From Thecamonas trahens ATCC 50062 (lineage: Eukaryota > Protista > Apusomonadida), in NCBI RefSeq assembly GCF_000142905.1, contig NW_013657673.1:571976-618594 (forward strand): a stretch of DNA of 46,619 bases, in the 5' to 3' direction. Both the position numbers and the translations under genes were made by a program. This document shows positions 10,304 to 31,746 of this stretch, in pieces; positions within the stretch are counted from its first letter, which is position 1, and each line of letters starts with the position of its first letter. The notes under the pieces are model-generated. The model was not told the DNA's origin. It did not search any database and saw only the letters and a list, made by a program, of their open reading frames with translations.

Positions 10304-10572
10304 GCTCCCGCGGCACAACCACCAAGACAAGTGGTAGTGCGTCGCGAGAAAGGGCAGTCAACTGCCACCACCCTGCTCACGGCCTTGTCGGTGCCTACCC
10401 CTCGCCGCGCTCGCTGGGCGAGCTGGCAAGGAACGCCCGCTCGATTTCACGGCCTTTTCCTGGAGATGACAAACTGGCAGGCGATCGTGATCAGGCTCCG
10501 GTTCCGGGCTCGGACTTGGGGCACGTGCGCACGTGCTTGGCGTCGGGTGCGGCATCACCAAGACTCGTCGCC

Positions 10573-13295
10573 ATGGCCGAGGCAGACGTTCCCCACCCGA
10601 CAGTAGAGGCGTTGTATGCGGCACTGATTGAGGACGACGTGCTGCAACTAGCGCGGGTGCTCCTGACCGAGCGGCCGAGCCCGGCGGTGCTGGGCCTCCC
10701 TCTCCCGCGTGCCTTCAGCTACTCGCTCGGCGAGCTGACGGGCGGTACGCTGCTGCACCTCGCGGTGGTAGTCCGCTCGCTACCGGCGACGCTGCTGCTA
10801 CTGGTCGCTGGAGCGCCGCTGGAGCCAGGAGTCGTCGGCGTGTGGACCAAGGGCACGGCAACGCTGACCGGCACCCCTGCCCAGCTGGCGACCTCGCTCG
10901 GCGCCCGCGGCTTGCCTGCTCGCCAGCTCGCGGCGTATTTGGCGGCGCCGTGGCTCAAGGCCGCGGCGCTGGCGGCAGTGGTTGACTCGGAGGCACATCG
11001 CCCCAGTGCGGCCGAGGCGGTGGAGAGCGGACACAGGGAGGGAGGCGATGACGGCGACAGCCTCTCGCGCGAGGCACATGCTGCAGCGCAGGCGCGCTGG
11101 ATCAAGGCGAGGCTGGCGCTGGAGGAGCAGGTCGAGGAGCTGGAGGAGGAGCGCAATGTGCTTGCGCGCCGAGTCGACGAGCTAGAAGCGCTGACTGAGG
11201 ACAACTACCGGGCATCGGCCGATGCCGCCGCCGAGGCCCGCATCCAGGTCCTGCAGCAAAAGTTCCGCGCCTACCGCGACCGCATGGCCGAGGCACACGA
11301 GGACGACGTGCGGACGATCAACAGCAAGTGGAAGCAGCGGCTGGGTCAGCTGCAGGGCAAATGGGAGGCCGAGTCCCGCGCTGCAGCGCTCGAGCGCGAG
11401 CGTGCCTTTGAAGACCATCTTGCTGCTGTCGTCGAGCGGCTGCGCAAGGAGCACGGGACCCAGATCTCGCTTACACGCAAGGAGTTTGAGTTTTCAAAGA
11501 GCAGAACACTGCTCTCGAGAGCTCCAAGGCCGAGTGGGAGGGCGAGAAGGCGGCCGAGACTGCTAAGCTCCGCGAAGCCTACGAGGCTCGGCTTGCCGAC
11601 GCCACCGCCCAGCTCCGGCTTGAGCATGCCGCCGACGCCGGCGCCCGCGATGCGCGCATTGTCGAGCTCGAGCAGTCACTTGCTGCTACCCGCGCACAGC
11701 TGTCGAGTGCCCGCAGTGATGCTGTCCGCGCCCAGGCCAAGGCCGACGCCCTTACCGCGAGCCTGGGGACGGCCCCGACCGCCGTCGCTGGCACCGAGGC
11801 CGCCACCGCTGGCGCCGCTGACGCGCAGCACACCACACATTCCGTCACATTTGCGCCCTCTACACCTGCGCATCGCGGGCCAGCCAAGTCGTCGCTCACC
11901 GCCGCTCTCTCGCCGGAGCCCACCGCCAAGCCCGCAGCCGAGCCCGCGGTCGAGCCCACCCCACAACCTGCGATGGAACCCACGCCGGAAGCCACTCCGG
12001 ACGTTCCTGCCGTGCCCGCGCCTGCCGCTGCGCCGCAACCACTCCCTCACGCCACTGCCATGGTCCCGGGCTTCCCGCCTCACGTCATGGGCGTCCTCCT
12101 CCGTATGCTGCCGATGCAGCCGCCGTCCTCGCCGCTGGTCACCCGCATCCGCGACTCGCTCGAGACGCTCCTTGCATTTGGCCCGGTCTCGATGGACATT
12201 TCCGATAAGCGGCTGTCTGCGTACGCTGTGCTGAAGCGACTGGAAGTCTTGATGCCGCTGCTCTCGTCGAGCCTTGTTGTCCCGCTCCGCAACTCGACGC
12301 TACAGCGCATGCATCGCATGCTTCGCGAGGCCGACGCGCTGGTTGCGCGTGTACAGCAAAAGTACCGCTTCTCGTCCAAGGTTAAGGACGCCCACTACGA
12401 GGTTGTCCACGGCCTCATCGACGACACCATGGTCTCGGTCCTCGACGACCTCACGTCGATTGTGTGCGAGCCAGAGGCTAGCCCGGCCATGCCGGGCGCG
12501 CGGGTCGCGGCGCGGATGCTGACGGCGCAAGTTGAGGCTGCCTGCGGCCCAGTGCCACCCGGCGCGCTTGCCATCCCTGGTGCCAGCAGCGCGCGCCCGA
12601 CCGGCGGCTCGACGTCAGGTGCGGCCTCGATCGCCGGCTCGTATCGCTCGACTGGCATCGGCTACGAGCCGGACATGCTCAGCTCGTTCAACGTCTCAGA
12701 GCCGTCAGCGGCGTCGGTGCCGGACACTGTGGCCGGCTCGGCACCCGCACACTCGGCGCTGCACGCTGGCCTCGGCCGCCCCGAGCTCTCGTCGACCACC
12801 TCGCGGCTGCCCACCAACACCGCCGCGACCCGTGCCGACTCGTACCTCTTCCGCACCACATCGGCGGTCGAGAAGCGGGAGTCACGTGGCTTCTTTGGCA
12901 GAGACGGCGACGGCGACGAGAGCAAAGGTGATCTCGATGACGACGACGACGAGGTCTTCCGCATCGCCGCTATCCTCCAGCAGCGCCGTGATTCGAGCCG
13001 CGACGAGCCGCCGCCGCCGCGTGTCCCCAAGCCGGACACACCCAAACCCATCGCCAAGCGCGCTGTGTCGAAGAAAAAGCGCCGCAAGAAGAGTGCCCGC
13101 GCATCAACATCCCGCTCTCGCGGCACGGCGCGTGCTCCGGCGGATCCCTTTGCCACCGTCAACGATCCGCTCGGTGCTCTCGCTGGTGACGACAACACCG
13201 ACGTAGCCACCGACGCCGACGCCGACGCCGACGATCCTCGCGAGCGTGCCGTCTCGGCCAACATGACTACCTCTAACTCGATGTTCTCATTGTAG
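10573..13295 (+). CDS. Hypothetical protein, ~907 aa: ankyrin-like N-terminus, long coiled coil, Pro/Ala-rich linker, helical domain, disordered tail
   Basis: GGTLLHLAV and GTPAQLA ankyrin-like motifs; E/K/R/A-rich heptads. Adding one T to TTTT at 11491-11494 continues the coiled coil (EFFKEQNTALESSKAEWE...) with no stop into ORF 11973..13295. Confidence 0.7.
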
Positions 13296-13571
13296 GCCAT
13301 TTTGAACCGTTGAACGCACCCATCTGATCAACGTGCTTGCGCACCCGCCAGCCGTCGCGCTCGCGCCAAACGGCCAACCCGCTGACGCCGCCCCATTTGT
13401 CAACTCCCTCAACCCGTCCCCTCTCATCGCCGTTAACTCCCTACACTGCTCTCACAAGAGGTCAACCCACGCCACATTGCACCGCAGCCGAACACAGGTA
13501 CCTCCATCCACACACACACGCGCGCTCCCTCTCTGTCTTTGCCTTAACCTGTCCAACGCTCCAACGGGCAC

Positions 13572-14604
13572 ATGCTCTCGCACCACGCGTCGGTGGCGGC
13601 ACTGTCCAACCCGACAGCGGCATCTGCGGCGCTAAAGCACATGTTCGCTTGCTGCGAGTGCACAAAGTGCCAGGCGGCAGATATCATCAGTGCTGGCGGC
13701 TGTTACTGCTGCTCGTGTCGCTTTGTTCATAACATTGCCGTCCCGGACGTCCTCCCGCTGCTCCGTCCTCTGGCCATGACCTACCCGTTGGAGGACTCGG
13801 CTGTCTTTGATCACCTCCCCCACCCTGGCTCGGCCTACGTTCATCATGTGCTCAAGGCGCCCAAGTCAGTCCTCGATCCTGGTCTTGTGGTCTGGGGTTT
13901 TGAACTCTGTGAGACGCCCGATCGGGTCCTCGACCTCACTCCGCTCATCTTTGGCATCATCTCGTCGCCTATCCCGAGCGAGGCCGCCACCCTATTGGCG
14001 GTCTCGCTCTCCGACAGCGGCGTGACGCTGGCTCCGGTCGCTGGCAGACCCGAGAGCGTGGTCATTCCATGGCCGATGGAAGCCAGCGAACTCTATGGCG
14101 CGCAGTACAGTCTCGAGCTGGAGCTGGTGCCTGTCCTCTCGCCAGGTCCTGCGCTCCAGCTGCGGTCGATGCGGCTGTGCCGGTCAGGTCCAGGCTCTAC
14201 GGCGTCGCTCGACAAAATCCCGGACACTACACTTGACATGCCAAGCCCGCGGCCGACCTGGCCCGTTCCGCAAACCTTCTCGCGCGGCATGTACATGACG
14301 ATGACGGTCAATGAGTCGCTGCTCGGGTGGGCGGTGACCGGGCCGGCACTCTCGCTGGCGTACCACATGACCAACTTGACTGGACCAGTCTCGAGTGCGG
14401 CCGATGCTGACCTCTGTGTATGCCGGTGCCACAAACCGGACGATGTGCTCGCGCACCACTTCTACTGTTGCACATGCCGCGAGGAGCAGGGCGCGGCGCT
14501 TTCCGACTTGCCGAGCCTGATCACACTCAAGGCGGTTCACTCGCTGGCGCAAGTTGTGCTCGGCGGCCAGGCTACACCGCTACTGGAGGGCATGTCTCCG
14601 CGGT

Positions 14605-14637
<33 letters not shown>

Positions 14638-17600
14638 TGTCACCGGCAGCGGCTTTGTTCTCCAAGTCGGGCTCGGGCCTGCTTGACGTTGCCGAGCCCG
14701 GAGAGCAGAGCTTGAACGGCATTGCGCTGCTTCCGCGACGACCGACCGCATCAGCGACTGGCTACGTTGCGCACTCGCTCCCGTCGCTTCTTGCCAACGG
14801 ATTCTACCTCCGCGGCGCCGGCGAGATTGAGATGTCACACTCGCAGACCTCTGCGCCACTGGTTCTTGCGCTCTTTCCACCAGCTACACATGCCATTCGC
14901 GACCCGCGGTGGGCGGCCAACGCGGCCAAGGCCGATCCTCGGTCGCGCGGCGCACCGCTCTCGGTCACCGTCGTTCTGAAGCAGGTTGAGTCGCGGAAGA
15001 GCGACGTCACCTTTACGCTAACCGTCGTCTCCACGCTTGGGCCGCTCGAGGTTGACGGTGAAGCCAGTGACGACGTGACAGTTACTGGCACGCTGCCAGC
15101 CGCCGACGCCAAAGCGTTGCGGCTTGGCATCCTTCCAGTCACCATCGACCTTGTCTATGCACCGGGCGATGGCCACGCGCTGAACGTCGGCCTCAACGGC
15201 GAGGACGTGCTCGCGGTTGTCCTTCCGGTCGCCCGGCTCGTTCCGATCGCTGTTCCGGCACTACTCACCGCCAACGCCACCAACACGCTCGCACGCTCGG
15301 TCAACGTCGCAGAGCTGACGGTCGAGCCCGAGACCGACCCGGCGTCGTTAAGCGAGGCGCAATGCATGTGCTCATGCCATGCACCAGAGCTCCCAGCTCC
15401 GCCGACAAGAGCACGATACCCACGGACGGTGGCATCAGTCTCATGCGAGTGTGGCTGCCACCAGTGCGTCGTTAGGCCAGAGTCGAATCCGAGCTACATC
15501 GGGCTCTTTTCCCAGGCCTACACGGTTCACCACCAGGGCGTGGATGAGTCTGGAATCCGGACTCTTGAGAAAATGCTGGAGGTCGAGGCCTCTGCTGCAA
15601 CCGCAGCAACGATGGCAGCCATCGAGGCTGGCACGCTGGCAATTGCATCGCACTGCTGCGGATGCTCACCGCCGTGCTGCGGCTGCTCGGTCCTCACACC
15701 GGAGCACATGCCGCTGCTCCTCACCTCGTTTAAGGCGCGCAAAGTTGCGTCGCAGCTTGCACTTGTTGGTGCGGCCTCCCTCACAGCCAATGTGATCAGA
15801 CTCACGTCCGATGAGATCGATGCTGCTGGCGCCGTGTGGCTCCGCCAGCCGCGGATTGTTGGCCGAGGCTTCTTGCTCGAGTTCGAAGTGCGTCTGGCAC
15901 CGTCGCTACCGGCCACGCCCGGCTCGGGCGTGACTGCGTTCATCCAGGCCGACGCGGCCGGTTCCTCGTTTGCGCCGGCTCCAGGCAGCGGTCCGGCTCG
16001 CGGCCTCGGCCTCAGACTCGAGACGTCGCCGGCGACGGCTTCGCGCGGCGCCGAGCTAGTGGTCGAGATGTATGAGCCTCAATGTGGTGGAGTGCCGATC
16101 GAGGTTGCGCGCGCGAGCGTCGACGATCACAGCGTGCTGGGCAGTGTGCTCGATGGCGACTTTCACGCCGTTCACGTCGAGTACATCGGCACCAACGCGC
16201 TTCTGGTGGTTGAGCTCGACTACGACGAGGTGGCACGTGTGACGCTCCCACGGGCACTGCTTGGCGCTGAGCTGAGCAACGAGACCGAAAAGGTGAGCTA
16301 CCCGGCGTTTGTTCTTGGCTTTGCTGCGAGTAATCCCGAGACGAGCGCGTCGACCCACGACGTCGGGCGATGGACTTTTACCGTTCCGTCGAGCGTGCTC
16401 GGCGGAAGCGACGGGTGTGTGTGCGACTGCCATCCGCTGTTTGAGCTGACATCCACACTCCCGCCGCGAGCCTTTGCGCCCCACCTTGTCGACGCCATGA
16501 TCGAGCACTGTGGTGGTACACAATGCGGCAATTGCGAGTGCCTCTGTCACGGCGAGCGTGGCGAAGAGGCGAGGCGAAGTGGGCTTGCGCTTGCGGCGGC
16601 GGTCTCGCTCTCGGAACTTGCCGCCGGCGGGGCATCGAGCCCGTATCTGGCGACCAAGCCCGAGAACGTGTGTGGCGAGTGCGCTTGCAAGGGCGTGACC
16701 CGACCGACAGCACTCCCGACGTCGTACTCTGCCGAGGCATCGCTGGGATGCTGCTCGTGCCGGGCGCATCTTGGGCGGGTCTCCGAGTCTGAGGTTGCGC
16801 GGCTGCTCTCGTCGGTGGAGCTGCCGTTCTTTGATGAGACGTACTCACTCCTCTCGCTCTGTGGCGTGGCTGCTGTTGACGAATCGTCGGTGCTCCTGCT
16901 GACACCTGCCACACCGCCGGCGACCCGGACGTCATCGGTGGGCGCGTGCTGGGTCCGGGAACCGCGGCTCCTCACCGATGGCTTTGAGCTTCACTTTGAG
17001 TTTAGCATCCGCACGATGATGGGCTCGATTCCCGGTGACGGCTTCGCACTTGTGCTACAGAGCGATCCCGCTGGCCCGCTCGCCGAAGGCCGGGCTGGTG
17101 ACGGCAACGGGTATGCGGGCATCCGCAACGCGATTGCGCTTGAGTTTGACGTCTACCACCACCACCACGTCGACACTGGCGTGCCGCGGCACACACCGCA
17201 CATCTCGCTCCAAGTGCGGCAGTCGCCAGACACGCCGCTGTCATCGCATCATGACTCGTCGCTGGCACTCTTTCCCGACGCACCGTCGCTGCTCACGCCT
17301 CATAAGCAAAGTGTGGGCATGGTTGTCGGGCCTGACGGGCACGTCGTCATCTCGCTCAATGAGCGCGTTATTCTCACTGCTGACCTGCCGCGCGAGGCGC
17401 TGCCGGACGTCGGCTTTGTTGGCTTTGTCGGCTCGCACTCGTCGCTCACGCACTCGACGTTTGCGATTCACTCGCTTTCGTTTGAGCCGATGCATGGCGA
17501 CTCTGACGCATGTGCGTGTGCGTGCCATCGGCTTGGAACTACAGCGGCGTGTGCTTGCAATTGCCACGCCAGTTGCTGTCCCAGCTGCCTCGTTGTGCCG

Positions 17601-20600
17601 CAGCTGCAGGTACCGGGCTTTTCGTCGCCACTGCTGGCGATCAAAGGCAGCCGGATTGTGTTCAAGCGGTCTTTGCAGTGGGAGGCGTGCGGGGCACGAC
17701 TCGAGGATACCGACAGGCTCAACAAGCTCGTGCTGGATGGACTGGCCTCGCTGCTTGCACGCTCGCCACACACTCGATGGTGCGTGAGCGTGTGGCGGAG
17801 CGACCCACACTGGTATGACGCTACGGCAGACCATCGGGCACACGACAATGTGCGCGATGCCGAGGGCGAGCCTGTGGCTGGCGCGTCAAACATGGATTTG
17901 TGCGCGATGCGAGCAGCAACGGTAGTAGCGTCGCTTGTCGAGCGCGGCGTCGCCGCGGATCGCCTGGAGGGGCGCGGGGCCGGGTCTGATGCGCGGGGCG
18001 GAAGGACGGAGCTCGCCATTCTACAGCCGGCGAAGACGCTGGTGGCTGACAGCGACGCTGAGCGGCTGGCCGACCGGCGGGCGGCGAAGCGAGAGCGTGA
18101 AACCGCAGCGCGACTCCGGGAGGGACTGCCGCGGCATGTATGCGAGTGTGGGTGCCACAACGAGTGGGAGCCCCCGACGCTTGCACCGCCGCCAGCGCGG
18201 GCGCATGCGTGCTGTCAATGCGCGCTGCGTCGCGAGTACAGCTCGCTGGACGACATGCCAGGAGTGCTGTACCGGAGCGGGCCGGGGCTTGTCGAGTTTG
18301 AAGCTCACATTGAGTTTGTGGCGTGCTCGGCAATGCTTGCGCCGGCATCGCTGGTCAACGAGCGGCTGCTCAACGCGGCGTATCACTTGCTGGTGCGGTA
18401 CTTTTTGTAGAGCTGAGCGTTGTGGGACGGGTGAGCGGTCTGCTGGCCGACGGCGTGTATCCGTGGTACGATGCGTCGGGAGGTCTGTGGTACGGGCGGC
18501 CGGAGGAGCTGGCTCTCGCGCGAGCAGCGGCGGTCAAGGCAGTTCTTGTCGACAACGGAGTAGACCCAGTCCGGATCCACACGTCGAGCGGGGCGCCCGA
18601 TGGGCGGCGCGGGTCCGGGCGAGTGGAGCTGGCGCCAGTGGTGGTACCGCCGTCGGCGGCCGATCGCGCGTGTGGGTGCGAGTGCCACGCCGCACCTCAG
18701 CCTGCGGTTTGGGAAGCAGCTTCCGGCGCCGGGTGCTGCGGGTGTGTGGGTGCGCTGTTTTGTGTGCCCGAGGCGGCATCTACGCCGCAGCTGCGGATCC
18801 GCGGCGGTGTGGGCACGCTCACACTCCCCTTGATTTTCATGCTTGGCGAGAGTGCACTCCGAATGCCGTCACCGTCGAACGCGGTTGGTATCCGGGCAGT
18901 CTACGACGTGCTCGCGCTCTATCCGCGGGCGCGGGTACACATTCTTGTCTCTGCGGTGCCGGAACAGTCGGGCGTTGCGGTCTCGCGTCGACATCACAAA
19001 CTGGCGAGTGCGCGGGCGAGGCGGGTATGCAAGATGCTGGTGTCGATGGGCATCGACAATGATCGGGTCCGGGGCGGATGCCAGCAGACTGTGGCGCTCC
19101 GAGCACCTCCTTCGACGTCGCCGCTCCCAAACGTGGTGTTTGACTTTGGCTACGACGCGGCAGCGCCAACGAGAGCTGACCAGATTGTGGAACCGAGCGT
19201 TGCTGACGACTGCGTGTGTGGATGCCATGTACAGGTGGAGGCGGAGGCTGTGCTGCCGCGGGGACCTGTGGCGTGGCCCGAGTATCCACTGGCAGACGAA
19301 ACGGTTGTACGATACGGGTATGCGGCGGATGTGTGCGGTTGCGAGGCATGTTCTGGGCCCGGCGCCGGAGCTGTGGAGCAGAGTTGGGTGCTTGGCAGCG
19401 TGGCGACGGTACGGGCGCGACGGCTACCTGGCCACAAGCAGAGTCGCGCGCCTGATGTGTGCCGCGAGCGAGTGTACGACTTGGCGACGCATACGCAGTC
19501 GGGAGTTCTCGGCTTTGGTTCACGGCACGGGTACACGGGCGAGGACAACAGATACAAACCGCCGCTCTCGACGGCGGACGAGTACTTTGGACTTCTTGAG
19601 CCTGGCCAGCGCCGGTCGTGCGCGGCGCTGATGGCGCCTCCGGCGGTTGAGCACGGCCGGAGGCATGTAGACGACGACGACGAAGTGGCGCTGGTGACGC
19701 GCGCGCTGTCACGGTCATTGACACGTCGAAGCGGAGCAAGTGTGCTGGCAAGCTTGGGCGGTGCGAGCTCGAGCCCGAGTCGGGGCCTGCTCTCGTCGCT
19801 CATTCGGCCGCACCACGACTGCAAGGCGCCGCGATCGCTCTCGCGAGTGCTGCGGCGGATGCCGCCCGGACCGGCACTGGCGCATGCCGTGGCTGAGGGG
19901 CGGGAGCGGGCTTCCCCCAAGCGGCGACGGCGGGGCCGGAGCTGGAGCGAGTCGTCGAGTGAGTCTGGCGACGGGCAGTTCAACGATGCGCTTGTAGAGA
20001 CGACGGACGAGCTTGACGACGTGGACGTGAGCAAGGAGGCACTGAGCGTGGCGCTTGTTGCCGAAGCTCAGCGAGCGCCGTGCTTTGCTGCGAGTGTCGG
20101 CGTGCACAGGGCTTGCCGCTCCCGCTGGTGCAGGTCACGAATGGGCAGCGACTCGACGCGGCGTTTTCGCACACGTCGATGGTGTTTGAGACGGCGGGCA
20201 TGTACACATCGGGACCTGCTATTGTGGAGAACGGCGAGCTGCAGCTAACACCTGCGCCGCCGCAGGGTGTGGCGTCGACGCTGCACAAACAGGGATCGAC
20301 CGGTGGTGGGTTTCTGCTCACGCGGCGGCTGCTGGCGGACGGATTTGTGGTTGTGTTTGAGTACAAGGCCGAGCGCGACGACGGCGGACTCGGACTTGGC
20401 TTTGCGCTTGTGGCGCACAACGACCCAGCGCGGTTCCAGGCGCTCGGCTTTTCGGGCGCCGGGCTTGGCTGTGTTGGGCTGGAGGACGCGTTCTCGCTCC
20501 GATTTGTCTCGTGTCAGCAGCCTGATGGGCCGATTTACACAAGGCTGGGCGTCCACTCTGCGCATGACGGCGGCAAAGTGGCAGCCGTCGAGAACGTGGG

Positions 20601-23600
20601 CGACCTGTGCGACGGAGGCGTCCACGAGGTGCTTGTGCGGTACGAGCCGGCGAGCTCTGTGGAGGCGCCGCTGCTGCATGTCGAGATCGATGGCGTGCCG
20701 CTTATGGCGGCGCGGCTTGTGAGCGGCGACGTGCCTGCAGCCGGCTACCTCGGCTTTACTGGCACGTCTGGCCCTGGGGCGTCATGGCTTCGGCACAGGA
20801 TCTCGCGGTTTGAGTATGGTGCGCTTGCAGGAGTACCGAGCGAAGTGTGCCGGTGCGGGTGCCATCAGCGAGAGCGGGACGGGTTGTGCGGTCCGGCGAC
20901 GGTGGTGTGGCCGGAGCTCGAGTCGTTGTGGCGGTCACCTCTGGCGGTGAGCTCGCCGATCATAGTTCATGTCTCGCTCCACGTGGAGCCGACGAGCGTG
21001 AGCGCTGGGAGCGTCCCAATTGTGGTTGCGCTGTCTGACGGGGCCACGTTTGTGGGCTTTGAGCAAGTGCTCGCGGGGCTGGAGAGTGGCGACGAGTGGA
21101 TGCGAAACGACGAAGTGCTCGGGCAAATGGGCTGGGCGCGGGCCGGCGACATACTTTCGGCCGGGAGTGGGCAGTGGCTGCCTGTGGTAGCGCCGACGCT
21201 GCGAGAGCGGGTGTCACGCAGCGGAACGTGGAACGTGGGCGTGACGTTTGTGGGCGCGGGCTGTGATGGGGCGTGGTGGGCGGCGCGGAGCGGCGAGGGT
21301 CTTGCAGCCTCGCCGGAGCTCGCTGTCTCGACGCTGCCTGTGGAGGCTGTGCTGGCGCGGCTGAAGAGCCCGGCGGCGGCGCCTGTGGTGATGGGGCACG
21401 GGCTTGGCGGGCGGGTGACGGTAGAGTGGCTCGCGGGACGGAGCGACTGTGTGGCGAGCATGGACCTTGCTTCGCTTGGCGTGGAGGTTTACTCGCCACT
21501 TGCGCACGGTGAGTTTGTGATCAAGGGCGCAGTGGTGGCGGTGGGCGGCGGCGGGCGCGTGCCTGTGGTGAATCGGCTGAGCGCAAGCGAACTTGCGCAA
21601 CGAGCACGGTTCAACCGTGCGGTTGAACTGACGTCTGCAGGCGTTTGCGTGTCCAAGGGGCGCGCGCGCGAGCGAGTGCTCACGCTGGGGGTGTGTGACG
21701 GAGGCTTGCGCAGTCAAGCGATGGTGGTTCATGGGGCGTTGCCGCGAGCGCGGCCGCAGCTCTGGCTGCAGATGAGGGTGGAGTCCGAGGGCGCATGCAT
21801 GTTTGGCGTGTCGGACACGCAGCGGCTGATTGGGGTGTGCGTGGAGAATGATGGAAGTCCGAGGGTGGTGGCCGGGCGTGACGACGGCGACCCAGTTGAG
21901 CTCAGTCTCGACGGCCTCCACGAGGTGGACATGAAGTGGTCGAGTGATGCAAAGAGCAAGAGGCGGCCGCTGGTTATTCACCTCAGCTTTGGAGTGTCTG
22001 TTGTCCGAGTCCGAGTTTTGGCAGCCGAGAGTCTCGCCGAGCTGGGCGTTGGCGAGGTGTTTGACGCTGATGTTGTCGACGTGTTTACGCGACCGCTGTT
22101 TGCGGTTGTGGCGAGCACCGGGCTCGACGGTGGAACACGGGTGTCGTCGGTGGCAGTTGGCGCTGGGCAAGGGACGCTCGACGCTGTGAGCGCAGAGACG
22201 CTTGTGGATATTGGAATATGGGCGCGAGAGGTGGCAGTGGACTCAGGAGCTGCAGTTGGAAGCGAAGCCGGGATCGGTGGGCGGGTGTTGAGCGTCTCGC
22301 TGGCTGCACTGAGTCGCGGGGTGTGGGGCCTGGTGGCGCCGACAGCGGAGGCTGAGCGAGTCTGTCGGGAGTACGAGCAGCGAGTCCGTGGCTCTGTTGT
22401 GGAAGTACCGGAGCAGCCGCTGGGCGTGCTTGTTGCCGGGCATGCGGTGGGCGAGCTGGACGCGCGGTTTCGGTGGGTCATTGCGATTCGTGTCCATGTG
22501 GAGTCGCTGCACAAGGCGCGCGGTGAGTTGAAGCGCGAGTCGCTGTTTGTGGGCGTCGGCGACAAGCGGCGGTACGTCGGTTATCTGCGACAGGGCGCGC
22601 CGCGTGTGGGTGAGGCCGGTGGGGCTGTGGTCTCGGGCAAGGCGGTGTTTACGGCCAAGGAAGAGTCTATGGCCTGGGATGGGCCTGCGCTGGACAGCGA
22701 AGCTGCGGTGAGCGGGTGGCACGCCTCGCGCCTCGGCGAACTGTTCACTGTGGTGGTGGGCGTGCCGCGGAACGGGAGGCAGAGCGGCCGCTCGCCGTGG
22801 GTTGGCGTCTACTCGGCATCGGAAGAGCTGTGGCTGGTGCAGGACGAGGTGAGCGGAGTGCTCAGTGACGACGCTTGTGAGCTGGGGCTCATGTTCTGGA
22901 GCCGCGAGGCATCTGCCGAGTATCGGGTGCGCGACGTGTACGTGCAGCTGGTTGACATGGATGCTGGCGGGAGCGTGTACACGCAGGACATGCCGCCGCG
23001 GTGGCTGATGCACCACGGGCGGTTTCCCGGCCGCCGCGTGTGGAGAGCGGGAGCTTGGTGATCGGGCGCGGGTATGCGTACCAGAAGCTGATCGAGGTGG
23101 GGCTGGGCAAGCTTGCGGGGCGGCGGACACGGCCGCCGCTGGCCAAGCTGCTTGTGACGGCGCAAGTGCGGATGACTAACGCAGGACCTGTGCTGGAGCC
23201 ACCGATCTTGTTCGAGCGGTTGTCGGCGTTTGTTAAGCGGGAACAGGCTGGTGCGCTGCGGGATGTGGTGCGGCTGATGGAGCGGTTCCCGTTCCTCTCG
23301 ATCAATGTTACCGGGCACGTGGCGCGGGCGTTTGCGGTTGGGAGCCAACGGAGCGCGCCGGGGCTGGGATCTGACGCGCTGGCGCGCGGACGGGCTGAGG
23401 CTGTGGCGCGGGTGCTTGAGGAGCTGGGACTAGCGCGCAAGCGGGTGCGGGTGGTGTGCGGCGGCGAAGGGCCTGCGACCGGGCCAGCGGACGTGGTGGC
23501 GCTTAGCTGGGACGTGGAGCGCGTGGCTGTGGGCGTGTGGCAGGCCGAGGTTGCCCCGCTTCTTATTCCGACGTTTGACGGCGTAGGCGGCGAGTCTGCG

Positions 23601-26600
23601 CTTCAGCCGGGATGGCAGGTGTTTGGGCCCGGCAGCGTGTCGCTGGTGACCGGCGGGTTCGAGGCCGGGCATGAGCGGCCGCGTGCGGCGTGCAGCCTGC
23701 TGACCAAGACGCGTAAGATGCTTGCGGACGGGTTTTCGGCAGGCGTGCTCGTGAGCGTGGGGCCATCGGCAGCAGCGGGCCTCCTGGAGGCTCGCGGCGG
23801 TGCCGGATCTGTGGTTGCTGGGCGTGCGGGCCTTGTGTTTTCCGATGAGTTGGAGGCCGGTGAGCCTGCGCCGCGGGGGCGGGTGGTTGTTGGTTTTGAG
23901 TTTGGGGTGGAGACGCGGTTGGTGATGCGGTCGTGGGACTGTGACGGTGGCGGGCGAGTGTGGGGGGCCGTGAGCGGCCGCGATGGGCTGTCTGTCATCA
24001 ACGACGGTTTCGAGCACGAGCTGGGCGTGGTTTTTGAGGCAGTGCGTGGAGACGCCGGTGTTTGCCGTGTGAGCGTGGACGGCGACGAGCTGTTGGTGGT
24101 GGCGATGCCTTCTGGCTTTGCTGGGATGCTGCCACTGGGGCACGTAGGTGTGGGCGTGGTCAACGGCGCTGCGGCGACGATCAACGCCGAGTTTCGGTGC
24201 CTCTCGTACAGCTACGGCGGGCCTGCGAGCCTGCGAGCTGGGGTGGTGGCAGAGGTGAGCAAGTGCGAGGCGCCGCCGGTGCCATGGGTGCTCACGATTG
24301 GCGGGTACGGATTCCGGACCAAGGGCGGGGTGGACATGGGCGGTGTTGAGGCCGGAGCAACTGTACCGCCGATGATGATTGGTGTGGCCGCGACGGACCG
24401 GGCGGCGCTCTCGCCGCTGCGTGGGCCGCGAGGCCGGGGCCGCGGGCGGAGTCGGGGCCGGGGCCAGGGCCAAAGAGGTTTGGGCCGAGGTCGAGGTCGA
24501 GGCCGAGGCCGGGGGCGTGGAGGGCGGCGCGGGCCGGGTGCTGGCTTGCTTGGCGGCGTGCAGCTTGTGGTGTCACCAGGGATGGCTGTGGAGTCTGGGC
24601 TGGTGAGCGTGCAGAGTGCAAGCCCTGTTGGCGATCATGTACGGCGAGGCAACCGAGACGGCGGCGGCGGTGTGGAGCGCCGGTGGATGGACGGAGGTGG
24701 GAGTGGAGGGCAGCGGCGTGGCGGCGAAGTTCTCGCGGGGCTCGAGTCTCGTCTAGTGCTCGACGAGTATGGAATGATCTCGCTGGACGACGGCGAGTAC
24801 GCGAGCGGCGGCCATACGCTGGCAGATGGTGCGCGGTTTGGGCACACGAGCGTGAGCAACTACGCGCAGACCAAGGTGTTTGTGTTTGGTGGGTATGGGG
24901 CGAGCGGGCTCGCGCTGGACTCTGTTGTTGTGGGCAAGGTTGTGCGAGACGGGGTGGAGAGCTGGCAACGGATGGGCCGGAGCAAGGGCAGCGGAAGCGA
25001 GGTGCCGCGCGGGCGGGCGTGGCATGCTGCGGTTCAGCTCGGCGGGTACGGCGGGGCGAGCAAGATGGTTGTGATTGGCGGCGAGTATGTGACGGAGCGC
25101 GGTGTGCAGTATCTCGGCGATGTGTGGGAGCTGGAGACTGAGCGCGAGGAGTGGCGTGCTGTTGTGGTACGCGGCAAGTTTGAAGCGCGGTCGATGCATA
25201 GCGCGGTGGCTGTGGGCCTTGCGGGTGGCGACGGCGGAAGCGGCGGGGTGGGACTCGCGGGCGGGAGCCAGTTGGTGTATGTGTTTGGCGGACGCGGGCG
25301 GCGCGGGTATCTGGACGACGTGGTGAGCTACAACGGAGTGAGCCGGGTGTTCAGTTCTGTGAGTACGTGGGGAGCACGACCGCTGGGGCGAGCGGGGCAT
25401 AGCGCGAGCGCGGTGGGCAAGTTCATGTATGTGTTTGGCGGGCGGAGCGGAGGCGGGCTGCTGGGCGATCTTGCACGGCTGGACGTGCAGAGTGGCGAGT
25501 GGAGCCAGGTACTGCTTGCAACTTCGGGCGAGTTGCCGCTGGGACGGTTTGGCGGTGTCATGTGCATGGGCGGTGAACGTATGGTTGTGTACGGCGGATG
25601 GACGGAGAGTGGAGGCTGCGGGTGGGCGAACGACGTGTGGCATGGCGAGGTGGAGGAGGAGGCGCTTGGGCCAGGCGAGGTGGGCGAGGGCGGGATGGGC
25701 CGACTGGGTATGCGGATGCTACCTGGCGTGCAGCAGACGAGGCGACAGGCCGCCCGTGCGGGCCGAGCAGTGCTGGCTCGGCGGGCGACGGCGCCTGTGG
25801 TGGGGACGATGTCTGTCAAGACGCCGTTTGTGATGGGCGGCTCGGGAGTTGCGCTTGCGCCGTGGCGGGTGTGGCCGCAGGCGTGCAAGGTGACGGGCAA
25901 CGGGCTGTACAGCGGGCGGGCGGGCGAGGAGCGCCGGGTGGTGGTTGCTGTGGCGGACGGGCGTGGCGAGGCGTACGAGTATGCGCTCGGGGCGCGGCAA
26001 CGGATTGTGGTTGTGGCTGCGGGGCGGTCGTGGTTCTGGGGCTCCAAGGCAGGCGCGCGGATGAAGGTGGCGACCGAGGCCGAGGCGATCGGGCGCGGGG
26101 TGTACGGTGCGCAGTTTGTGCTCGACAGGATCGGAGTTTACGAGGTGGCGGTGTACTTTGAAGACGAGGACCACTGGCCGGTGCGGACAGCGATCGCGCG
26201 GCGGGTATGCGAGGTGACTGCAGGCGAGGTCGACGCGGCGCAGAGCGTCGTGCTTGCCGAACCGAAGAGCAGCGTGAGCGCCAACGAAATGGTGGAGTGG
26301 CGGGTGGCGCTCCGCGACGAACACGGCAATCCGGTGGCCGGCAGCGAGCTGGAGGCAAGCCCCGCGGGCGGGCGGGTGATGGACCACGGCGACGGGACGT
26401 ACACGGCGCTGTGGGCATTTGTCCACGTCGGGCAATACAGCCTGGCACTTGCACGGGCTGGGCTGGTTGCGCCGGTTTGCGTGCGGGCTGGGCCGATGTG
26501 CGGACACAAGGCTGAGGTGCGGAGAACGAGTGAGGCAGCTGAGCTCGGGGCGTGGCGGCGGCTGCTAGAGGTGGGCGCTGCGCGCGACGAGTGGGGCAAC

Positions 26601-26864
26601 CCGAGCGTGGTCGGGCTCTGTGCCGAGGCTGTCGGCGGGCTCGCAGCCACCAAGATTGCTATCGACGACGACGGCAAGGCCGTGGTCGACGTCAAGTCGT
26701 TTGTGGCCGGGCGGAGCATCCAGATCCGGGTGACGTTGGCCGGCGGGCGGTTGGACGTAGAGGGCTCGCCGGTTGAGATTGTTGTGGCAACCGAGAGTGA
26801 CGACGAGAAGGACGATGAGGGCGAGAGTGGCAGCGTGCCGATCATGATTGTGATGCCCGAGTAA
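13572..26864 (+). CDS. Giant multidomain protein, ~4,430 aa: L-type (legume/ConA-like) lectin domains, 4 OmpA-C-like domains, Cys/His linkers, RG-rich stretch, kelch repeats, filamin/Ig repeats; start uncertain
   Basis: Four consecutive overlapping + ORFs (13572..18410, 18323..20248, 20080..23061, 23001..26864) join by single-base additions at homopolymers 18402-06, 20084-86 and 23023-28; the 18402 junction lies inside an OmpA-like domain. Lectin signature GDGFALVLQ...GNGYAGIRNAIALEFD; kelch RAGHSA...MYVFGG; filamin GNGL and DHGDGTYT. Confidence 0.8.
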
Positions 26865-26926
26865 AACGGATGTGGGCGAGTTGATGGCTGTGGGCGGCAA
26901 GACTCGACTCGCAGAACTTGGGCAAG

Positions 26927-29582
26927 ATGAGCGTGTCGGTTAAGGTCATGTTTGCGCCAAACCCGCCTGTGGACATGACGTTCAACCCAAACGGAACGTT
27001 CTACGATGCCATTACGGCTGCGTCTACAGCATGCCGAGTGGTGGGTCGTCCACCTGCTGATCTCGTCCTTGTCCATGCCACCTCCCGAAAGGCAGTGTCG
27101 CAAGAGGTAGGGAAGCAGGGGGGGGGGTGGGGGGTTGGGGGGTGGCGGTTGTTTTCTGGCTCTCGTCTGGTTTGCCCGCGGGCATGGGTGGCTTCTTTCG
27201 TCGACATGCATTCGTTGTTGTGTGAGGGGGCGTGGGGGGAAAGGGGGCGGGGCTGAGGGAGGGGGGAGGGGGGGGGGGGGGAGAGGGGGGAGAGGGGAGG
27301 GGAGGGGAGGGAGGGGGGAGAAGGAGGGGGGAATTGGGGAGGAGGGGGAGGAGGGAGGAGGGGAGGGGGAGGAAGGCGGGGAAGGGGGAGGGGGGAGTCT
27401 TCTGGCGTGACCTGTCATTTTTTGGCCATGGCTGTTTCAGATTGGCATCGGTTGCGTTGCATGCATGCAATGCATGGTACGGTGGCTAGAGGTGGGAGAG
27501 GACTCATGGAAAGAGTGAGGGCCCTGGGCTCTTTGGGCGTGGATAATTGTAGGAATGGGGCTCGCAATGGATTGCTGAGCTGGATGGAGAGACGCTGGAG
27601 CTGCAGCTGGGGGCGAAGATTGCGGTGCCGATGGCGATTGATGCGCTGAAGCACGACGACCGCAAGATCTTTGTGGAGCTGAAGAAGCGGCTGATGGAGG
27701 ACGAGTTTGCGTCGGTGTTTATCGACGCCAGCGGGCTCAGTGAGCTCATTCGGCTGGTGAAGGAGAGCAAGGGCAACCTGCTCGCAGCAGTGCTTGCGGT
27801 GCTGCCGCTGGCGATGAACTACGCCGAGTGGTCGATTCTGAGCGAGGATGTGGTGTTCAAGATTGCGGAAGGCATCACGTCGCCCAAGTCGAACATTGTG
27901 TCCAACTCGCTGGCGCTGATGCAAGGATATGGAAGCTCAGGGCCTGAGGCTGTTGCGGTCCTCCGGGCGGCGGTTCTCGCGCTTACGGGGCGACGAGCGC
28001 CGGGCCGCCGTCCAAGCCGTACGAGGCCGTGGTCAAGGCGCTGGTCAACTCTGCGGATCTCAACGTGCGGGCCCATGCACTGTCTGTGATCACGACGCTC
28101 CTGCTTGCGACCAAGATGGGAGATGAGCGAAACGCCATGATCGCGGCGCTCTCCGAGCTCGACTTTCCGACCGAGGTCAAGAACCTGGTGATGGACACGT
28201 CGTCGGGCTTTGCCGAGTCTAGCGAAACGCGGGCGTTCATGACAGCGTGGCTGGAGCCAAAGCAGGCTCTGCTCCAGGAGTCGTTCTCGTACGACAAGAC
28301 TGAGCATGCGGACAAGCTTGCGATGCTGTGGCACACGGTGTACCCGACGGAGCAGCTCGAGGGCGAGGTGACGACGCAGTGGAAGAAGTTTGGCTTTGCC
28401 AACGCGGATCCGCGGGCAGACATGAATCGGACGGGAGTGTTTGGCCTCCACTGCCTCCACTACATGTGCTGCAAGGACCCGGTGGAGTTTGCGACACTCA
28501 TCCAGTCGCAGCAGACGCGGACGGACCGCGACTATCCGCTGGCAGGCGCGGCGATGAGCATGGCGGATCTTGTGGCAAAGGAGTTTGCGCTCAAGGCAAA
28601 CGAGCATGACGTGGCGCCTGCCATTCTGCTCGACCACCCAAACGCAGTGGAGGAGATCTTCTGCGTGTGCGTCAATGTGGCGGACCAGATCTGGGTCTCG
28701 TTTGGAGGCGAGTACATTGACTATCCGATGGTGGTGGCCATTGCGCGCAAGACGCTGCAGGAGGTGCTTGGACGGCGGCCGTCGAGCATTGATGCGCTTG
28801 TCCGCGCAGCCGGGCAGGCGGTGACACAGCTCAAGGCCAAGGCCGGATCGATCGAGGAGACGTTTGCGGCGATGGGACTCACGGCCGAGACGGCCGAGAC
28901 GGAGCAGACGCTGGCGATGAAGGCCGCACTGGTGGAGGAGATGATGCCGGTGGTGAAGGAGCAGCTGAAGGCGGTGCTCATGCGCGGCGTCCCGCTCTTC
29001 TTCCCGCCGTCGGGCAAGGTCAAGCAGCCGGTCGGCGTGCGGCTCCAACTCAACTCTCTCGGCAGCCTGCTAGCGTTCACGGCCAAGGATGCGGCTGGCG
29101 AGGCCGCCATCGGTGGCGTGGTCCAGGTCCCGGTCGCCTCGATTGCCGATGTGGTGACCGGTGGCACATGCCCGATGTTTGCCGATCCCAAGAAGCAGGT
29201 CTCGCTCGACAAGGCGCTGTCGATCGCGCTCTTGCTAGCGACACCCATCGGCCCCGAGGACAACCCGCAGGTCGCCGTCCAGTTTGCCGCCACCGACCGG
29301 CGCACGTTTGCCACCGTCACCGAGGGCATCCGGTCGCTCCTCGGCCGGCCGCTCGAGGCCGAGACCTCAATCGAGGACGCCGAGCGGCTGGCAGACATGC
29401 AGCTCCGCATCCGTCTCATCGAGCTCGACGGCGACGTCAACCTGCCAACTGTCGAGCCCGCCCTTCCGCCGCCGCCGCCCTCGTTCGCCTTTGTTGTTCC
29501 CGAGGCCGATCTTGTGCTTGCTGGGCGCGAGCAGCCGTTCCGGGTGCCGAACGAGATCGTGGCCCCGTCGTCGTCGTCGTAA
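26927..29582 (+). CDS. ELMO: ELMO/CED-12 engulfment and cell motility protein, ~736 aa (ubiquitin-like N-terminus, ARM, ELMO, PH, PxxP); exons 26927-27106 and 27553-29582
   Basis: Phase-0 intron GTAGGG...TGTAG. ELMO domain WKKFGFANADPRAD...GVFGLHCLHY...DYPLA; PH-like VASIADVVTGGTCP...VQFAATDRRTF; C-terminal PALPPPPPSFAF. One G added to GGGG at 27987-27990 joins the two ORFs. Confidence 0.88.
27113..27400 (+). repeat. G-rich low-complexity tract in the ELMO intron
   Basis: Many G3-G10+ runs separated by A. Confidence 0.9.
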
Positions 29583-31542: not shown

Positions 31543-31746
31543 AGCAACACCTCCTCCCCTTCCCTGCTGCACACCAGATCAACCCTTCTCTGCTGCACAC
31601 CAGAAGACCCAGTTGCAGAGCGCGGAAGCTCCCGTCGTAGCTGGCACTGTTCAGCCCCCCCCCCCTCGCCCCCCCCCCCCCCCCTCCCTCCTCCCCCCCT
31701 GGGTAGCCAGCAAACACCGCACTCGCTGTCACCTCGCGCGACAGTG

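What the first reader, a model, noticed from the sequence alone, without database searches (positions are those of the whole stretch)
13572..26864. Giant eukaryotic protein combining lectin, OmpA-like, kelch and filamin domains: candidate bacterial cell-wall sensor/scaffold
Seen: four ORFs rejoin into ~4,430 aa. L-lectin folds lie at ~15760-16385, 16855-17490, 20200-20820 and 23610-24215, with more degenerate copies near 13800-15330. OmpA-C-like domains lie at ~17640-18025, 18305-18635, 18825-19145 and 23200-23515. An RG tract (24420-24535), kelch repeats (24830-25650) and filamin-type Ig repeats (25870-26790) follow. No signal peptide or TM is evident. Established: L-lectins bind glycans, OmpA/Pal/MotB C-domains bind peptidoglycan, and kelch and filamin repeats are often cytoskeletal scaffolds. 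Inference: a multivalent receptor/scaffold that could couple recognition of bacterial glycans to the cytoskeleton in a bacterivore. I do not recognise this architecture, and the frameshifts would hide it from automated annotation.
Basis: partly seen in the sequence, partly recalled or inferred. Interest (0 to 1): 0.85.

Follow-up and report, generated by a model that had tools for sequence, protein, structure and literature searches.

The report
Giant lectin–OmpA–kelch–filamin protist gene
The four broken reading frames are one real, uninterrupted 4,431-codon gene of the marine bacterivorous flagellate Thecamonas trahens, split only by three one-letter assembly errors; it encodes a probably cytoplasmic giant protein with a domain mix (legume-type lectin, bacterial OmpA-like, kelch, filamin) seen nowhere else, and its function is untested.

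Summary
The four + strand ORFs (13572-26864) are one gene. Every read set that covers the three junctions has one extra T in a short T-run: two runs of the organism, two marine/estuary metagenomes and, at the first junction, an ENA metagenome contig. So the frameshifts are assembly errors and the product is 4,431 aa. The organism is Thecamonas trahens ATCC 50062. Its public annotation splits the gene into separate models (a 1,612-aa ORF; AMSG_11678).

Profile searches confirm three L-type lectin domains, four OmpA-C-like domains, an RG tract, a kelch propeller and two filamin repeats. A fourth lectin has only weak support. The N-terminal "degenerate lectins" and the 20.9-23.0 kb block match nothing.

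The bacterial-wall-sensor reading is neither shown nor excluded:
- There is no signal peptide or membrane segment, whereas two other T. trahens lectin genes have clear ones.
- Only one lectin copy keeps the metal and sugar residues.
- At least three of four OmpA copies lack the peptidoglycan-binding Asp.

Nine N-terminal modules are each bracketed by CCxC and CxCxCH motifs. These brackets recur around OmpA-like modules in a distant protein known only from transcript-like contigs. That suggests a small, undescribed, probably intracellular, zinc-clasped module family. Both structure predictions failed.

The parts
13572..26864 (+). Whole coding sequence of one intronless gene, 4,431 codons once the three missing T's are counted. 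The start ATG at 13572 is the only ATG between the upstream gene's stop (13295) and the ORF. The stop TAA is at 26862-26864.
18402..18406 (+). Assembly error 1: T5 in the window, T6 in all reads. Frame 0 -> 2.
   Evidence: X1, X5, X6, X10; L007
20084..20086 (+). Assembly error 2: T3 in the window, T4 in reads. Frame 2 -> 1. It lies inside a CCxC motif.
   Evidence: X1, X5, X6; X10 does not cover the site
23023..23025 (+). Assembly error 3: T3 in the window, T4 in reads. Frame 1 -> 0.
   Evidence: X1, X6; X5 and X10 do not cover the site
13719..14414 (+). N1 (aa 50-281): module of unknown fold, bracketed by CCxC (aa 27, 46) and CxCxCH (aa 282).
   Evidence: no family match. AF2 failed.
14469..15362 (+). 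N2 (aa 300-597): module of unknown fold, bracketed by CCxC (aa 299) and CxCxCH (aa 598).
15738..16382 (+). L1: L-type (legume-like) lectin domain. The metal- and sugar-binding positions are degenerate.
   Evidence: PF00139, 37 bits, above cut-off; i-E 5e-15 over the full-length profile
16827..17486 (+). L2: L-type lectin domain. It is the only copy that keeps GDG, EFD, D and H of the metal- and sugar-binding site.
17574..18161 (+). O1: OmpA-C-like module with its CCxC (17574) and CxCxCH (18141) brackets.
   Evidence: i-E 4e-19 against an HMM built only from P0003/P0061 repeats
18207..18691 (+). O2: OmpA-C-like module with both brackets. It spans assembly error 1.
   Evidence: PF00691, 37.6 bits; 2e-9, profile positions 2-166 of 167
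18734..19231 (+). O3: OmpA-C-like module with both brackets. It is the most diverged of the first three.
   Evidence: 3e-4; Pfam E 0.042; weak MotB alignment
19238..20065 (+). Low-complexity linker rich in Ser, Arg and acidic residues, with a KRRRRGR basic cluster. No family match.
20194..20811 (+). L3: L-type lectin domain with degenerate binding positions. It is followed by the last CxCxCH (20848).
   Evidence: 9e-18
20887..23025 (+). U: 713-aa Cys-poor, Gly/Val/Ala-rich block of unknown fold. No internal repeat is detectable by pairwise alignment.
23196..23468 (+). O4: fourth OmpA-C-like domain, without Cys/His brackets.
   Evidence: PF00691, 29 bits, above cut-off; 2e-4; 6e-30, with the domain itself in the profile
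23610..24215 (+). L4: possible degenerate lectin-like beta domain. Support is weak.
   Evidence: z 4.2 against L1; 1 of 300 shuffles reaches its profile score; C-terminal half in register; no Pfam or PDB hit; AF2 failed
24420..24536 (+). Arg-Gly (RGG-box-like) tract.
24831..25650 (+). Kelch beta-propeller with about five recognisable blades.
   Evidence: PF24681 E 9e-36; PF24981 1e-22
25875..26447 (+). Two filamin/ABP280-type Ig repeats (25875-26171 and 26229-26447).
26469..26861 (+). Possible third Ig-like repeat (no Pfam hit) and an acidic C-terminal tail (26790-26861).

Best explanation
SHOWN:
- 13572-26864 is a single, intronless, single-copy nuclear gene of Thecamonas trahens. The assembly dropped one T in each of three short T-runs. 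The true product is one 4,431-aa polypeptide under purifying selection.
- It has two halves.
- Residues 1-2432 are Cys-rich. They form a chain of nine globular modules: two of unknown fold, three L-type lectins, three OmpA-C-like, and a low-complexity linker segment (no module proven) that lies between brackets just before the third lectin.
- Each module is preceded by CCxC and followed by CxCxCH.
- Residues 2433-4431 are Cys-poor. They hold a 713-aa unknown block, a fourth OmpA-like domain, a possible degenerate lectin, an RG tract, a kelch propeller, two or three filamin-type Ig repeats and an acidic tail.

INFERRED:
- The protein stays inside the cell. It has no signal peptide or membrane segment, it carries an RGG box and a basic cluster, and its bracket motif has an invariant His.
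- The CCxC/CxCxCH pair that flanks each module binds zinc and clasps the module's two ends together.
- The protein acts as a long multivalent scaffold. Its kelch/filamin end attaches to other proteins, most plausibly cortical actin or actin regulators.
- Its N-terminal array binds a repeating ligand.
- Most lectin and OmpA-like copies have lost the canonical sugar, metal or diaminopimelate contacts. The array has therefore probably been re-purposed from glycan and peptidoglycan binding to another ligand, with at most L2 (and perhaps O1) still able to bind a bacterial-type glycan.
For: Gene model:
- The extra T is present at all three junctions in every covering run and in L007.
- No joints (introns) were seen across 18200-23200.
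- The pieces contain no stops.
- 12 of 16 natural variants in two metagenomes are synonymous in the inferred frames.
- The genome has no paralogue.

Domains:
- Pfam hits.
- HMMs built from external sequences only.
- The module profiles hit 120 legume-lectin and about 40 OmpA/MotB/Pal/YiaD chains in the PDB.

Degenerate sites.

Intracellular location:
- Maximum 10-residue hydropathy at the N-terminus is 1.18, against 3.2 and 2.6 for two other T. trahens L-lectin genes with obvious signal peptides.
- There is no transmembrane-grade segment anywhere in the protein.

Bracket motif:
- The motifs alternate strictly as CC-domain-H along the chain.
- C, C, C and H are at least 90% conserved in 13 modules from three sources.
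- P0003 has seven such OmpA modules, no signal peptide and a CxxC...CxxH N-terminus.
Against: - No structure could be obtained. Both AF2 single-sequence models had pLDDT 31-34, so folds rest on sequence profiles only.
- The zinc clasp is pure inference.
- About 40% of the protein (N1, N2, the linker, U, L4) has no assigned family.
- Transcript ends were not seen, so an upstream spliced exon carrying a signal peptide cannot be excluded.
- Cys-rich repeats are also typical of extracellular proteins.
- L2 keeps a near-complete lectin site and all four OmpA copies keep the conserved Arg, so binding of bacterial wall material is not ruled out.
- The actin link of the kelch/filamin end is by analogy only. 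No CH domain or other actin-binding domain was found.
- The homodimer test of the last two Ig repeats gave no answer.
Confidence: 0.55

Rival explanations
1. The protein is a multivalent pattern-recognition scaffold that binds bacterial glycans (lectins) and peptidoglycan (OmpA-like domains). It meets them either in the cytosol, after phagosome damage or muropeptide leakage, or at the phagocytic cup. It couples this recognition to actin through kelch and filamin.
For: - Both domain families ancestrally bind glycans or peptidoglycan.
- L2 keeps the metal and sugar positions.
- The conserved Arg of the LSxxRA helix is invariant in all OmpA copies.
- The organism is a bacterivore (established knowledge).
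- The next gene, 62 bp downstream on the same strand, encodes an ELMO/CED-12 engulfment-pathway protein.
Against: - No signal peptide or membrane segment.
- L1 and L3 have lost the GDG Asp and the EFD metal ligands.
- O2-O4 lack the Asp of GHTD, and so do most copies in the relative P0003.
- P0003 carries the same OmpA module with no lectin, kelch or filamin.
- Gene adjacency alone is weak evidence.
Confidence: 0.22
2. The protein is an extracellular or surface adhesin. The true 5' end, a spliced exon with a signal peptide, is missing from this model, or the protein leaves the cell by an unconventional route. In that case the CCxC/CxCxCH motifs form disulfide knots, and the lectin/OmpA array binds prey bacteria outside the cell.
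For: - 3-4.6% Cys in the first 2,400 residues.
- The nearest lectin relatives are giant secreted bacterial adhesins.
- Two other T. trahens L-lectin genes are secreted-type.
- Kelch and Ig repeats also occur in extracellular proteins (established knowledge).
Against: - 13572 is the only ATG in the 276-bp gap after the upstream gene's stop. An in-frame stop lies 27 bp upstream of it.
- The bracket motif has an invariant His.
- The protein has an RGG tract, a basic cluster and an acidic tail.
- P0003 also lacks a signal peptide.
Confidence: 0.12
3. The frameshifts are real in the sequenced strain. The locus is then a decaying pseudogene or four separate genes, or it is read by programmed frameshifting or U-insertion editing.
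For: - The window and the public protein models carry the shifted frames.
- The nature of runs X1-X5 (DNA or RNA) is only guessed by the tool.
Against: - All three sites read +T in runs of the organism from two different years.
- The +T reading is also found in independent environmental assemblies: three at the first site, one at each of the other two.
- All three sites are T-runs, the classic site of homopolymer miscalls.
- Natural variants are 75% synonymous across the junction-flanked pieces.
Confidence: 0.04

Closest known systems
P0003 / P0151 / P0061: unnamed proteins from transcript-like SRA contigs and a JGI metagenome
   Same: They carry the same OmpA-C-like module with the same CCxC ... 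CxCxCH brackets and the same 'GY(T/A)', 'LSxWRAE' and 'GxGTDGxGxRxEL' signatures. Identity is about 30% over O1-O2. These are the only non-self hits to that region ahead of bacterial OmpA. They have no signal peptide.
   Different: They are 1,590-1,657 aa long and hold seven OmpA-like modules only. They have no lectin, kelch or filamin. The N-terminus is zinc-finger-like and Pro-rich. The source organism is unknown and nothing has been characterised.
Bacterial OmpA-C-like peptidoglycan-binding domains (OmpA, Pal, MotB/PomB, YiaD; Pfam PF00691)
   Same: The sequence profile of the four copies and their relatives hits about 40 solved OmpA-like domains (YiaD 1e-12, MotB 3e-7, Pal 8e-6). The helix LSxxRAxxV...L...G with its Arg is invariant.
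   Different: This is a eukaryotic protein with no export signal. The Asp of GHTD is lost in O2-O4. A roughly 20-30-residue insertion lies before the LSxxRA helix. The modules are flanked by Cys/His motifs that are not seen in the solved bacterial chains aligned here.
L-type (legume-like) lectin domains of giant bacterial surface proteins and of legume lectins (PF00139 / PF18483)
   Same: L1-L3 match over the full domain. The profile hits 120 PDB legume lectins. L2 shares 35-45% identity with lectin domains of 1,000-3,600-aa bacterial proteins.
   Different: The bacterial proteins combine the lectin with TSP3, Calx-beta or GSDH domains and are secreted. Here the lectins sit between Cys/His brackets in a protein without a signal peptide, and two of three have lost the metal and sugar ligands.
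Filamins / Dictyostelium gelation factor and kelch-type actin-associated proteins
   Same: The C-terminal rod is built of filamin/ABP280 Ig repeats next to a kelch propeller. The resemblance is in how it may work: as a rod and docking end of a scaffold.
   Different: No calponin-homology actin-binding domain and no BTB domain were found by Pfam. Dimerisation was not supported (no verdict). It is not a member of the filamin family.
Cytosolic glycan and peptidoglycan sensors of animals (galectins, NOD1/NOD2, FBXO2). Functional analogy only, from general knowledge.
   Same: These are cytoplasmic proteins that recognise microbial or exposed glycans and muropeptides without a signal peptide.
   Different: There is no sequence or domain relationship. 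No NACHT, LRR, galectin or F-box domain was found here.

Membership tests
L-type (legume-like) lectin domain, PF00139/PF18483 | Significant full-length match to the family profile | tested here: met
   L1 5e-15, L2 8e-77 and L3 9e-18 against an HMM built from external hits only. PF00139 is above its cut-off. The profile hits 120 PDB legume lectins. This is NOT met for L4 (weak) or for N1/N2.
L-type (legume-like) lectin domain, PF00139/PF18483 | Conserved Ca/Mn ligands (E and D of EFD, a later D, H) and the sugar-binding Asp of GDG | tested here: inconclusive
   Present in L2 (GDG, EFD, D, H, with a His run in place of the Asn). Absent in L1 (GSG, RLE) and L3 (GLG, RFV).
L-type (legume-like) lectin domain, PF00139/PF18483 | ConA-like beta-sandwich fold | tested here: inconclusive
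   The AF2 single-sequence model that included L1 had mean pLDDT 33.8 and is unusable.
L-type (legume-like) lectin domain, PF00139/PF18483 | Carbohydrate binding | not testable with these tools
   Needs a glycan array or pull-down.
OmpA-C-like / MotB / Pal domain, PF00691 | Significant match to the family profile | tested here: met
   Pfam is above its cut-off for O2 (37.6 bits) and O4 (29 bits). O1 4e-19, O2 2e-9, O3 3e-4 and O4 2e-4 against an HMM of external modules. The joint profile hits about 40 solved OmpA-like domains.
OmpA-C-like / MotB / Pal domain, PF00691 | Peptidoglycan (diaminopimelate) contacts: the Asp of GHTD and the Arg of LSxxRA (established from OmpA/Pal structures) | tested here: not met
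   The Arg is invariant in all four copies. The Asp is absent in O2 (GRVS), O3 and O4 (GHVA), and is off by one alignment column in O1 (WRSD).
OmpA-C-like / MotB / Pal domain, PF00691 | Location next to peptidoglycan (periplasm or cell envelope) | tested here: not met
   This is a eukaryotic nuclear gene with no signal peptide or membrane segment.
Kelch beta-propeller | Tandem kelch repeats matching the propeller profiles | tested here: met
   PF24681 9e-36, PF24981 1e-22, and Kelch_3/4/6/1/2 all above their cut-offs. An extra N-terminal blade lies at 24831.
Filamin (actin cross-linker) | Filamin/ABP280 Ig repeats | tested here: met
   PF00630 at 42.5 bits with 2 stretches. The individual repeats score 1.6e-5 and 7.7e-4.
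Filamin (actin cross-linker) | N-terminal calponin-homology actin-binding domain | tested here: not met
   No CH domain appears in any Pfam scan of the four pieces.
CCxC / CxCxCH-bracketed module family (undescribed; P0003-like) | Globular module preceded by CCxC and followed by CxCxCH, in strict alternation | tested here: met
   11 CxCxCH and about 10 CCxC motifs alternate around nine modules up to aa 2432. The same holds in P0003 (7 modules) and P0061. C, C, C and H are at least 90% conserved. No Pfam family covers the motif, and no paper contains 'CXCXCH'.
CCxC / CxCxCH-bracketed module family (undescribed; P0003-like) | Metal (zinc) binding by the brackets | not testable with these tools
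   Inference from the invariant His and the absence of an export signal.

The most novel reading that the evidence does not exclude
The CCxC-module-CxCxCH cassette is a previously undescribed zinc-clasped packaging for domains of bacterial origin (OmpA-like, L-lectin) inside the eukaryotic cytoplasm. On this reading the giant protein is a protist cytosolic mega-receptor. It recognises peptidoglycan and glycan fragments from ingested or escaping bacteria and signals to the actin/ELMO engulfment machinery. It would be an independent invention analogous to NOD and galectin surveillance in animals.
Probability: 0.1. Interest if true: 0.85.

Novelty: new variant of a known kind. Interest (0 to 1): 0.55.

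Why it matters
Practical point: the public Thecamonas trahens assembly contains single-T omissions. Here they break one 13.3-kb gene into several annotated "genes" (a 1,612-aa ORF; AMSG_11678, which carries invented introns). Domain-architecture surveys of this key sister lineage of opisthokonts therefore miss it.

Biological points:
- OmpA-C-like domains are a hallmark of bacterial envelopes. A single eukaryotic protein without an export signal that carries four of them alongside legume-type lectins, a kelch propeller and filamin repeats has no counterpart among 1.84 billion representative proteins searched with its lectin-OmpA region (aa 412-1611).
- The Cys/His brackets define a small, unnamed module family shared with at least one other source known only from transcript-like contigs.
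- If the modules still bind wall polymers, this would be a new kind of prey or pathogen sensor in a bacterivore. If they do not, it is a clear case of bacterial ligand-binding folds re-used as building blocks of a cytoplasmic scaffold.

Tried and rejected
- AlphaFold2 on 13572-16400 (943 aa) and on 23028-24455 (476 aa), both without an alignment, gave mean pLDDT 33.8 and 30.8. The models are unusable, so no fold search was run.
- Complex prediction with two copies of the last two Ig repeats (26172-26801) gave no verdict, score 0.00. This is not evidence either way.
- The protein-atlas search on the U block and on N1-N2 returned only chance-level neighbours, with 95-122 shared features.
- phmmer of O2-O3, O4, L2, U, N1-N2 and L4 against the PDB gave nothing below E 0.08.
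- hhalign of single segments against the lectin profile detected only L1-L3. Pairwise hhalign linked only L1-L2, L2-L3 and O1-O2.
- A search for internal repeats in the U block and the N-terminal block found none above the shuffle range.
- The search for homologous proteins on P0003, on the U block and on the kelch/filamin part found only P0151, the organism's own annotated model P0152, and one weak kelch hit.
- P0002/L007 first looked like a related species at 81% identity. It is the same species at 99.2% DNA identity. Its contig is chimeric: the tail maps to G000:C10:365923-366463.
- Intron explanations for the junctions were rejected. No GT...AG interval of the right length and phase fits the first junction when read by eye, and the reads show single-base insertions with no joints.
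- Fusion with ELMO was rejected, because frame 2 has a stop at 26882 after the frame-0 stop at 26862.
- Literature searches found nothing on this gene, on OmpA in Thecamonas, or on the CxCxCH motif.

Full report
**Gene model**

The region holds four long + strand ORFs in frames 0, 2, 1 and 0, each overlapping the next by about 100-230 bases. Each step is a -1 shift.

- Every run that covers a junction carries one extra T.
 - Behind 18401 (T5 becomes T6): X1, X5, X6, X10.
 - Behind 20083 (T3 becomes T4): X1, X5, X6.
 - Behind 23022 (T3 becomes T4): X1, X6.
- X1 and X5 are runs of the organism itself, from 2011 and 2020. X6 is an estuary metagenome and X10 a marine metagenome.
- An ENA metagenome contig (L007, 99.2% identical) also has T6 at the first site.
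- No joint (intron) was reported anywhere in the stretch.

With the extra letters the pieces 13572-18404, 18407-20086, 20089-23025 and 23028-26861 join into 4,431 codons, and none of the pieces contains a stop. Of the 16 substitutions seen in the two metagenomes, 12 are synonymous in the frames I assign. The frames are therefore coding and under purifying selection. The frameshifts are assembly errors in T-runs, not biology.

X1's depth rises from 3 to 22 towards the 3' end. That would fit a single 3'-biased transcript if X1 is RNA, but the tool only guesses the library type, so I do not count it.

**Gene ends**

- 13572 is the only ATG in the 276 bases after the upstream gene's stop, and an in-frame stop lies at 13545.
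- The stop is TAA at 26862.
- The ELMO gene's ATG follows 62 bases later. The two cannot be fused by a frame slip, because frame 2 has a stop at 26882.

**Organism and public annotation**

A protein search returned the organism's own model: [quoted passage not shown], which UniRef names "OmpA-like domain-containing protein". It sits on a contig of 618,594 bases, which is the contig of this window. That model has 1,466 aa. It starts at 19859 and jumps both downstream frameshifts with invented introns. A second public protein is exactly ORF 1, at 1,612 aa. No paper mentions the gene.

**Domains confirmed**

- **L-type lectins.**
 - An HMM built only from external hits scores 15738-16382 at 5e-15, 16827-17486 at 8e-77 and 20194-20811 at 9e-18, each over the whole profile.
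 - Pfam PF00139 is above its cut-off.
 - A profile that includes the three copies hits 120 solved legume lectins.
- **OmpA-C-like domains.**
 - Pfam PF00691 is above its cut-off for the second and fourth copies.
 - An HMM built only from the repeats of two foreign proteins (P0003, P0061) scores 17574-18044 at 4e-19, 18207-18691 at 2e-9, 18734-19069 at 3e-4 and 23196-23330 at 2e-4.
 - The joint profile hits about 40 solved OmpA-like domains: YiaD 1e-12, OmpA, MotB, Pal and PomB.
- **Kelch propeller.** The match is strong (PF24681 9e-36).
- **Filamin repeats.** Two are detectable, and a third Ig-like unit is not.
- **RG tract.** It is plain in the translation.

**Domains not confirmed**

- The fourth lectin (23610-24215) has only a weak signal. 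It scores z 4.2 against L1. One shuffle in 300 reaches its profile score, and its C-terminal half aligns in register.
- The N-terminal 13719-15362 and the 713-aa block 20887-23025 match no Pfam, PDB or Atlas family and show no internal repeats.

**Binding sites**

In the alignment with 23 lectin relatives, only L2 keeps the GDG Asp, the EFD pair, the later Asp and the His. L1 and L3 have lost them.

In the OmpA-like alignment the Arg of the LSxxRA helix is invariant. The Asp of GHTD is known from OmpA/Pal structures to hold diaminopimelate. It is missing in copies 2-4 and falls one column off in copy 1. Most copies in P0003 also lack it.

**Bracket motif and relatives**

- Eleven CxCxCH and about ten CCxC motifs alternate strictly as CC-module-H around nine modules up to residue 2432. 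There are none after that point.
- The HMMER scan of 1.84 billion representatives used residues 412-1611 as query. It found only three hits that carry two or more CxCxCH motifs.
 - One is the gene's own ORF.
 - One is a same-species fragment.
 - One is P0003, at 30% identity over the O1-O2 region.
- A fourth hit, P0061, also carries the motif. All other hits matched only the lectin.
- P0003 is 1,590 aa long and comes from 4.85-kb transcript-like contigs in six SRA runs. It consists of seven OmpA-like modules, each with the same brackets (its first module carries a CxxC variant of the leading CCxC). It has no signal peptide and a CxxC...CxxH N-terminus.
- In several P0003 linkers the two half-motifs are 6 residues apart. 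In others they are about 100 disordered residues apart, while their distance to the flanked module stays fixed. That is why I infer that each pair clasps its own module. This is inference only.
- The genome-wide DNA pattern for CxCxCH shows its only visible cluster in this gene, judged from the 100 of 450 hits that the tool listed.

**Location**

There is no transmembrane-grade segment anywhere in the protein. N-terminal hydropathy is 1.18, against 3.2 and 2.6 for two other T. trahens L-lectin genes that have obvious signal peptides. Together with the RGG tract, the basic cluster, the acidic tail and the invariant His in the brackets, this favours a cytoplasmic protein.

**Interpretation**

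- I rate the single-gene model at above 0.9.
- I rate cytoplasmic location at about 0.7.
- I rate retained binding of bacterial wall material at about 0.25.
- My best reading is a cytoplasmic, multivalent, probably zinc-stapled scaffold. Its lectin and OmpA-like folds have largely been re-purposed, and its kelch/filamin end docks onto other proteins.
A secreted adhesin with a missing 5' exon is less likely. A real pseudogene is unlikely.

**What failed**

Both structure predictions failed, the dimer test gave no verdict, and the Atlas searches gave only chance-level neighbours. All fold statements therefore rest on sequence profiles.

Every search used the four in-frame pieces, or parts of them, by reference. 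In my scripts the pieces were concatenated with X at each break, only for coordinates, motif counts and local HMM scoring.

Noticed in passing
window 10516-13295 and 26918-29582: The upstream gene appears as two overlapping ORFs in different frames (10516-12234 and 11973-13295). The ELMO gene appears as three (26918-27256, 27625-28089, 28029-29582). These could be further single-base assembly errors of the kind proven inside the giant gene, or they could be introns.
   Followed up: no
G000:C2:50357-50671 (-), locus L013 1198-1965: A second OmpA-like gene in the genome. It is a 255-aa ORF with a canonical 'MGHT' and 'LSLQRA', flanked by Ser-rich low complexity. It has no signal peptide and no Cys/His brackets.
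   Followed up: partly
G000:C2:183253-184032 (-), C27:421219-421971 (-), C38:198272-198841 (+): Three more L-type lectin loci. The C2 and C27 ORFs (about 850 and 1,100 aa) begin with clear hydrophobic signal peptides. The C38 locus looks like the ERGIC-53-type cargo lectin.
   Followed up: partly
window 19875-19954 and 21541: Two independent metagenome assemblies break here. L007 switches after 19954 to sequence that maps 100% to G000:C10:365923-366463, so it is a chimeric contig. X6 has loose ends at 19124, 19939 and 21558, and a contig joining 19875 to 21541 with 24 foreign letters between. This is either assembly chimerism in the low-complexity linker or a structural variant in wild populations.
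   Followed up: partly
L003-L006 (contigs of P0003): The 4.85-kb contigs end in Illumina adapter sequence within about 10 bases of the stop codon and start about 50-65 bases before the ATG. They are discrete full-length molecules with almost no 3' UTR. The source organism is unknown.
   Followed up: no
window 20887-23025: An earlier first-stage note calls this three copies of an unrecognised beta-rich repeat. Sliding-window local alignments found no pair above the range of shuffled controls.
   Followed up: partly
window 4008-6332 (-) and 31744-32748 (+): Neighbouring genes include a reprolysin-type metalloprotease with four or five thrombospondin type-1 repeats, and a TylF-type O-methyltransferase (E 5e-63). 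The latter lies in a locally AT-richer stretch (45% GC at 30-32 kb).
   Followed up: no
window 21686: One run of the organism (X5, depth 4.5) shows an extra G here, near a contig end. X1 (depth 21.8) and X6 do not. This is most likely an error in that contig.
   Followed up: no
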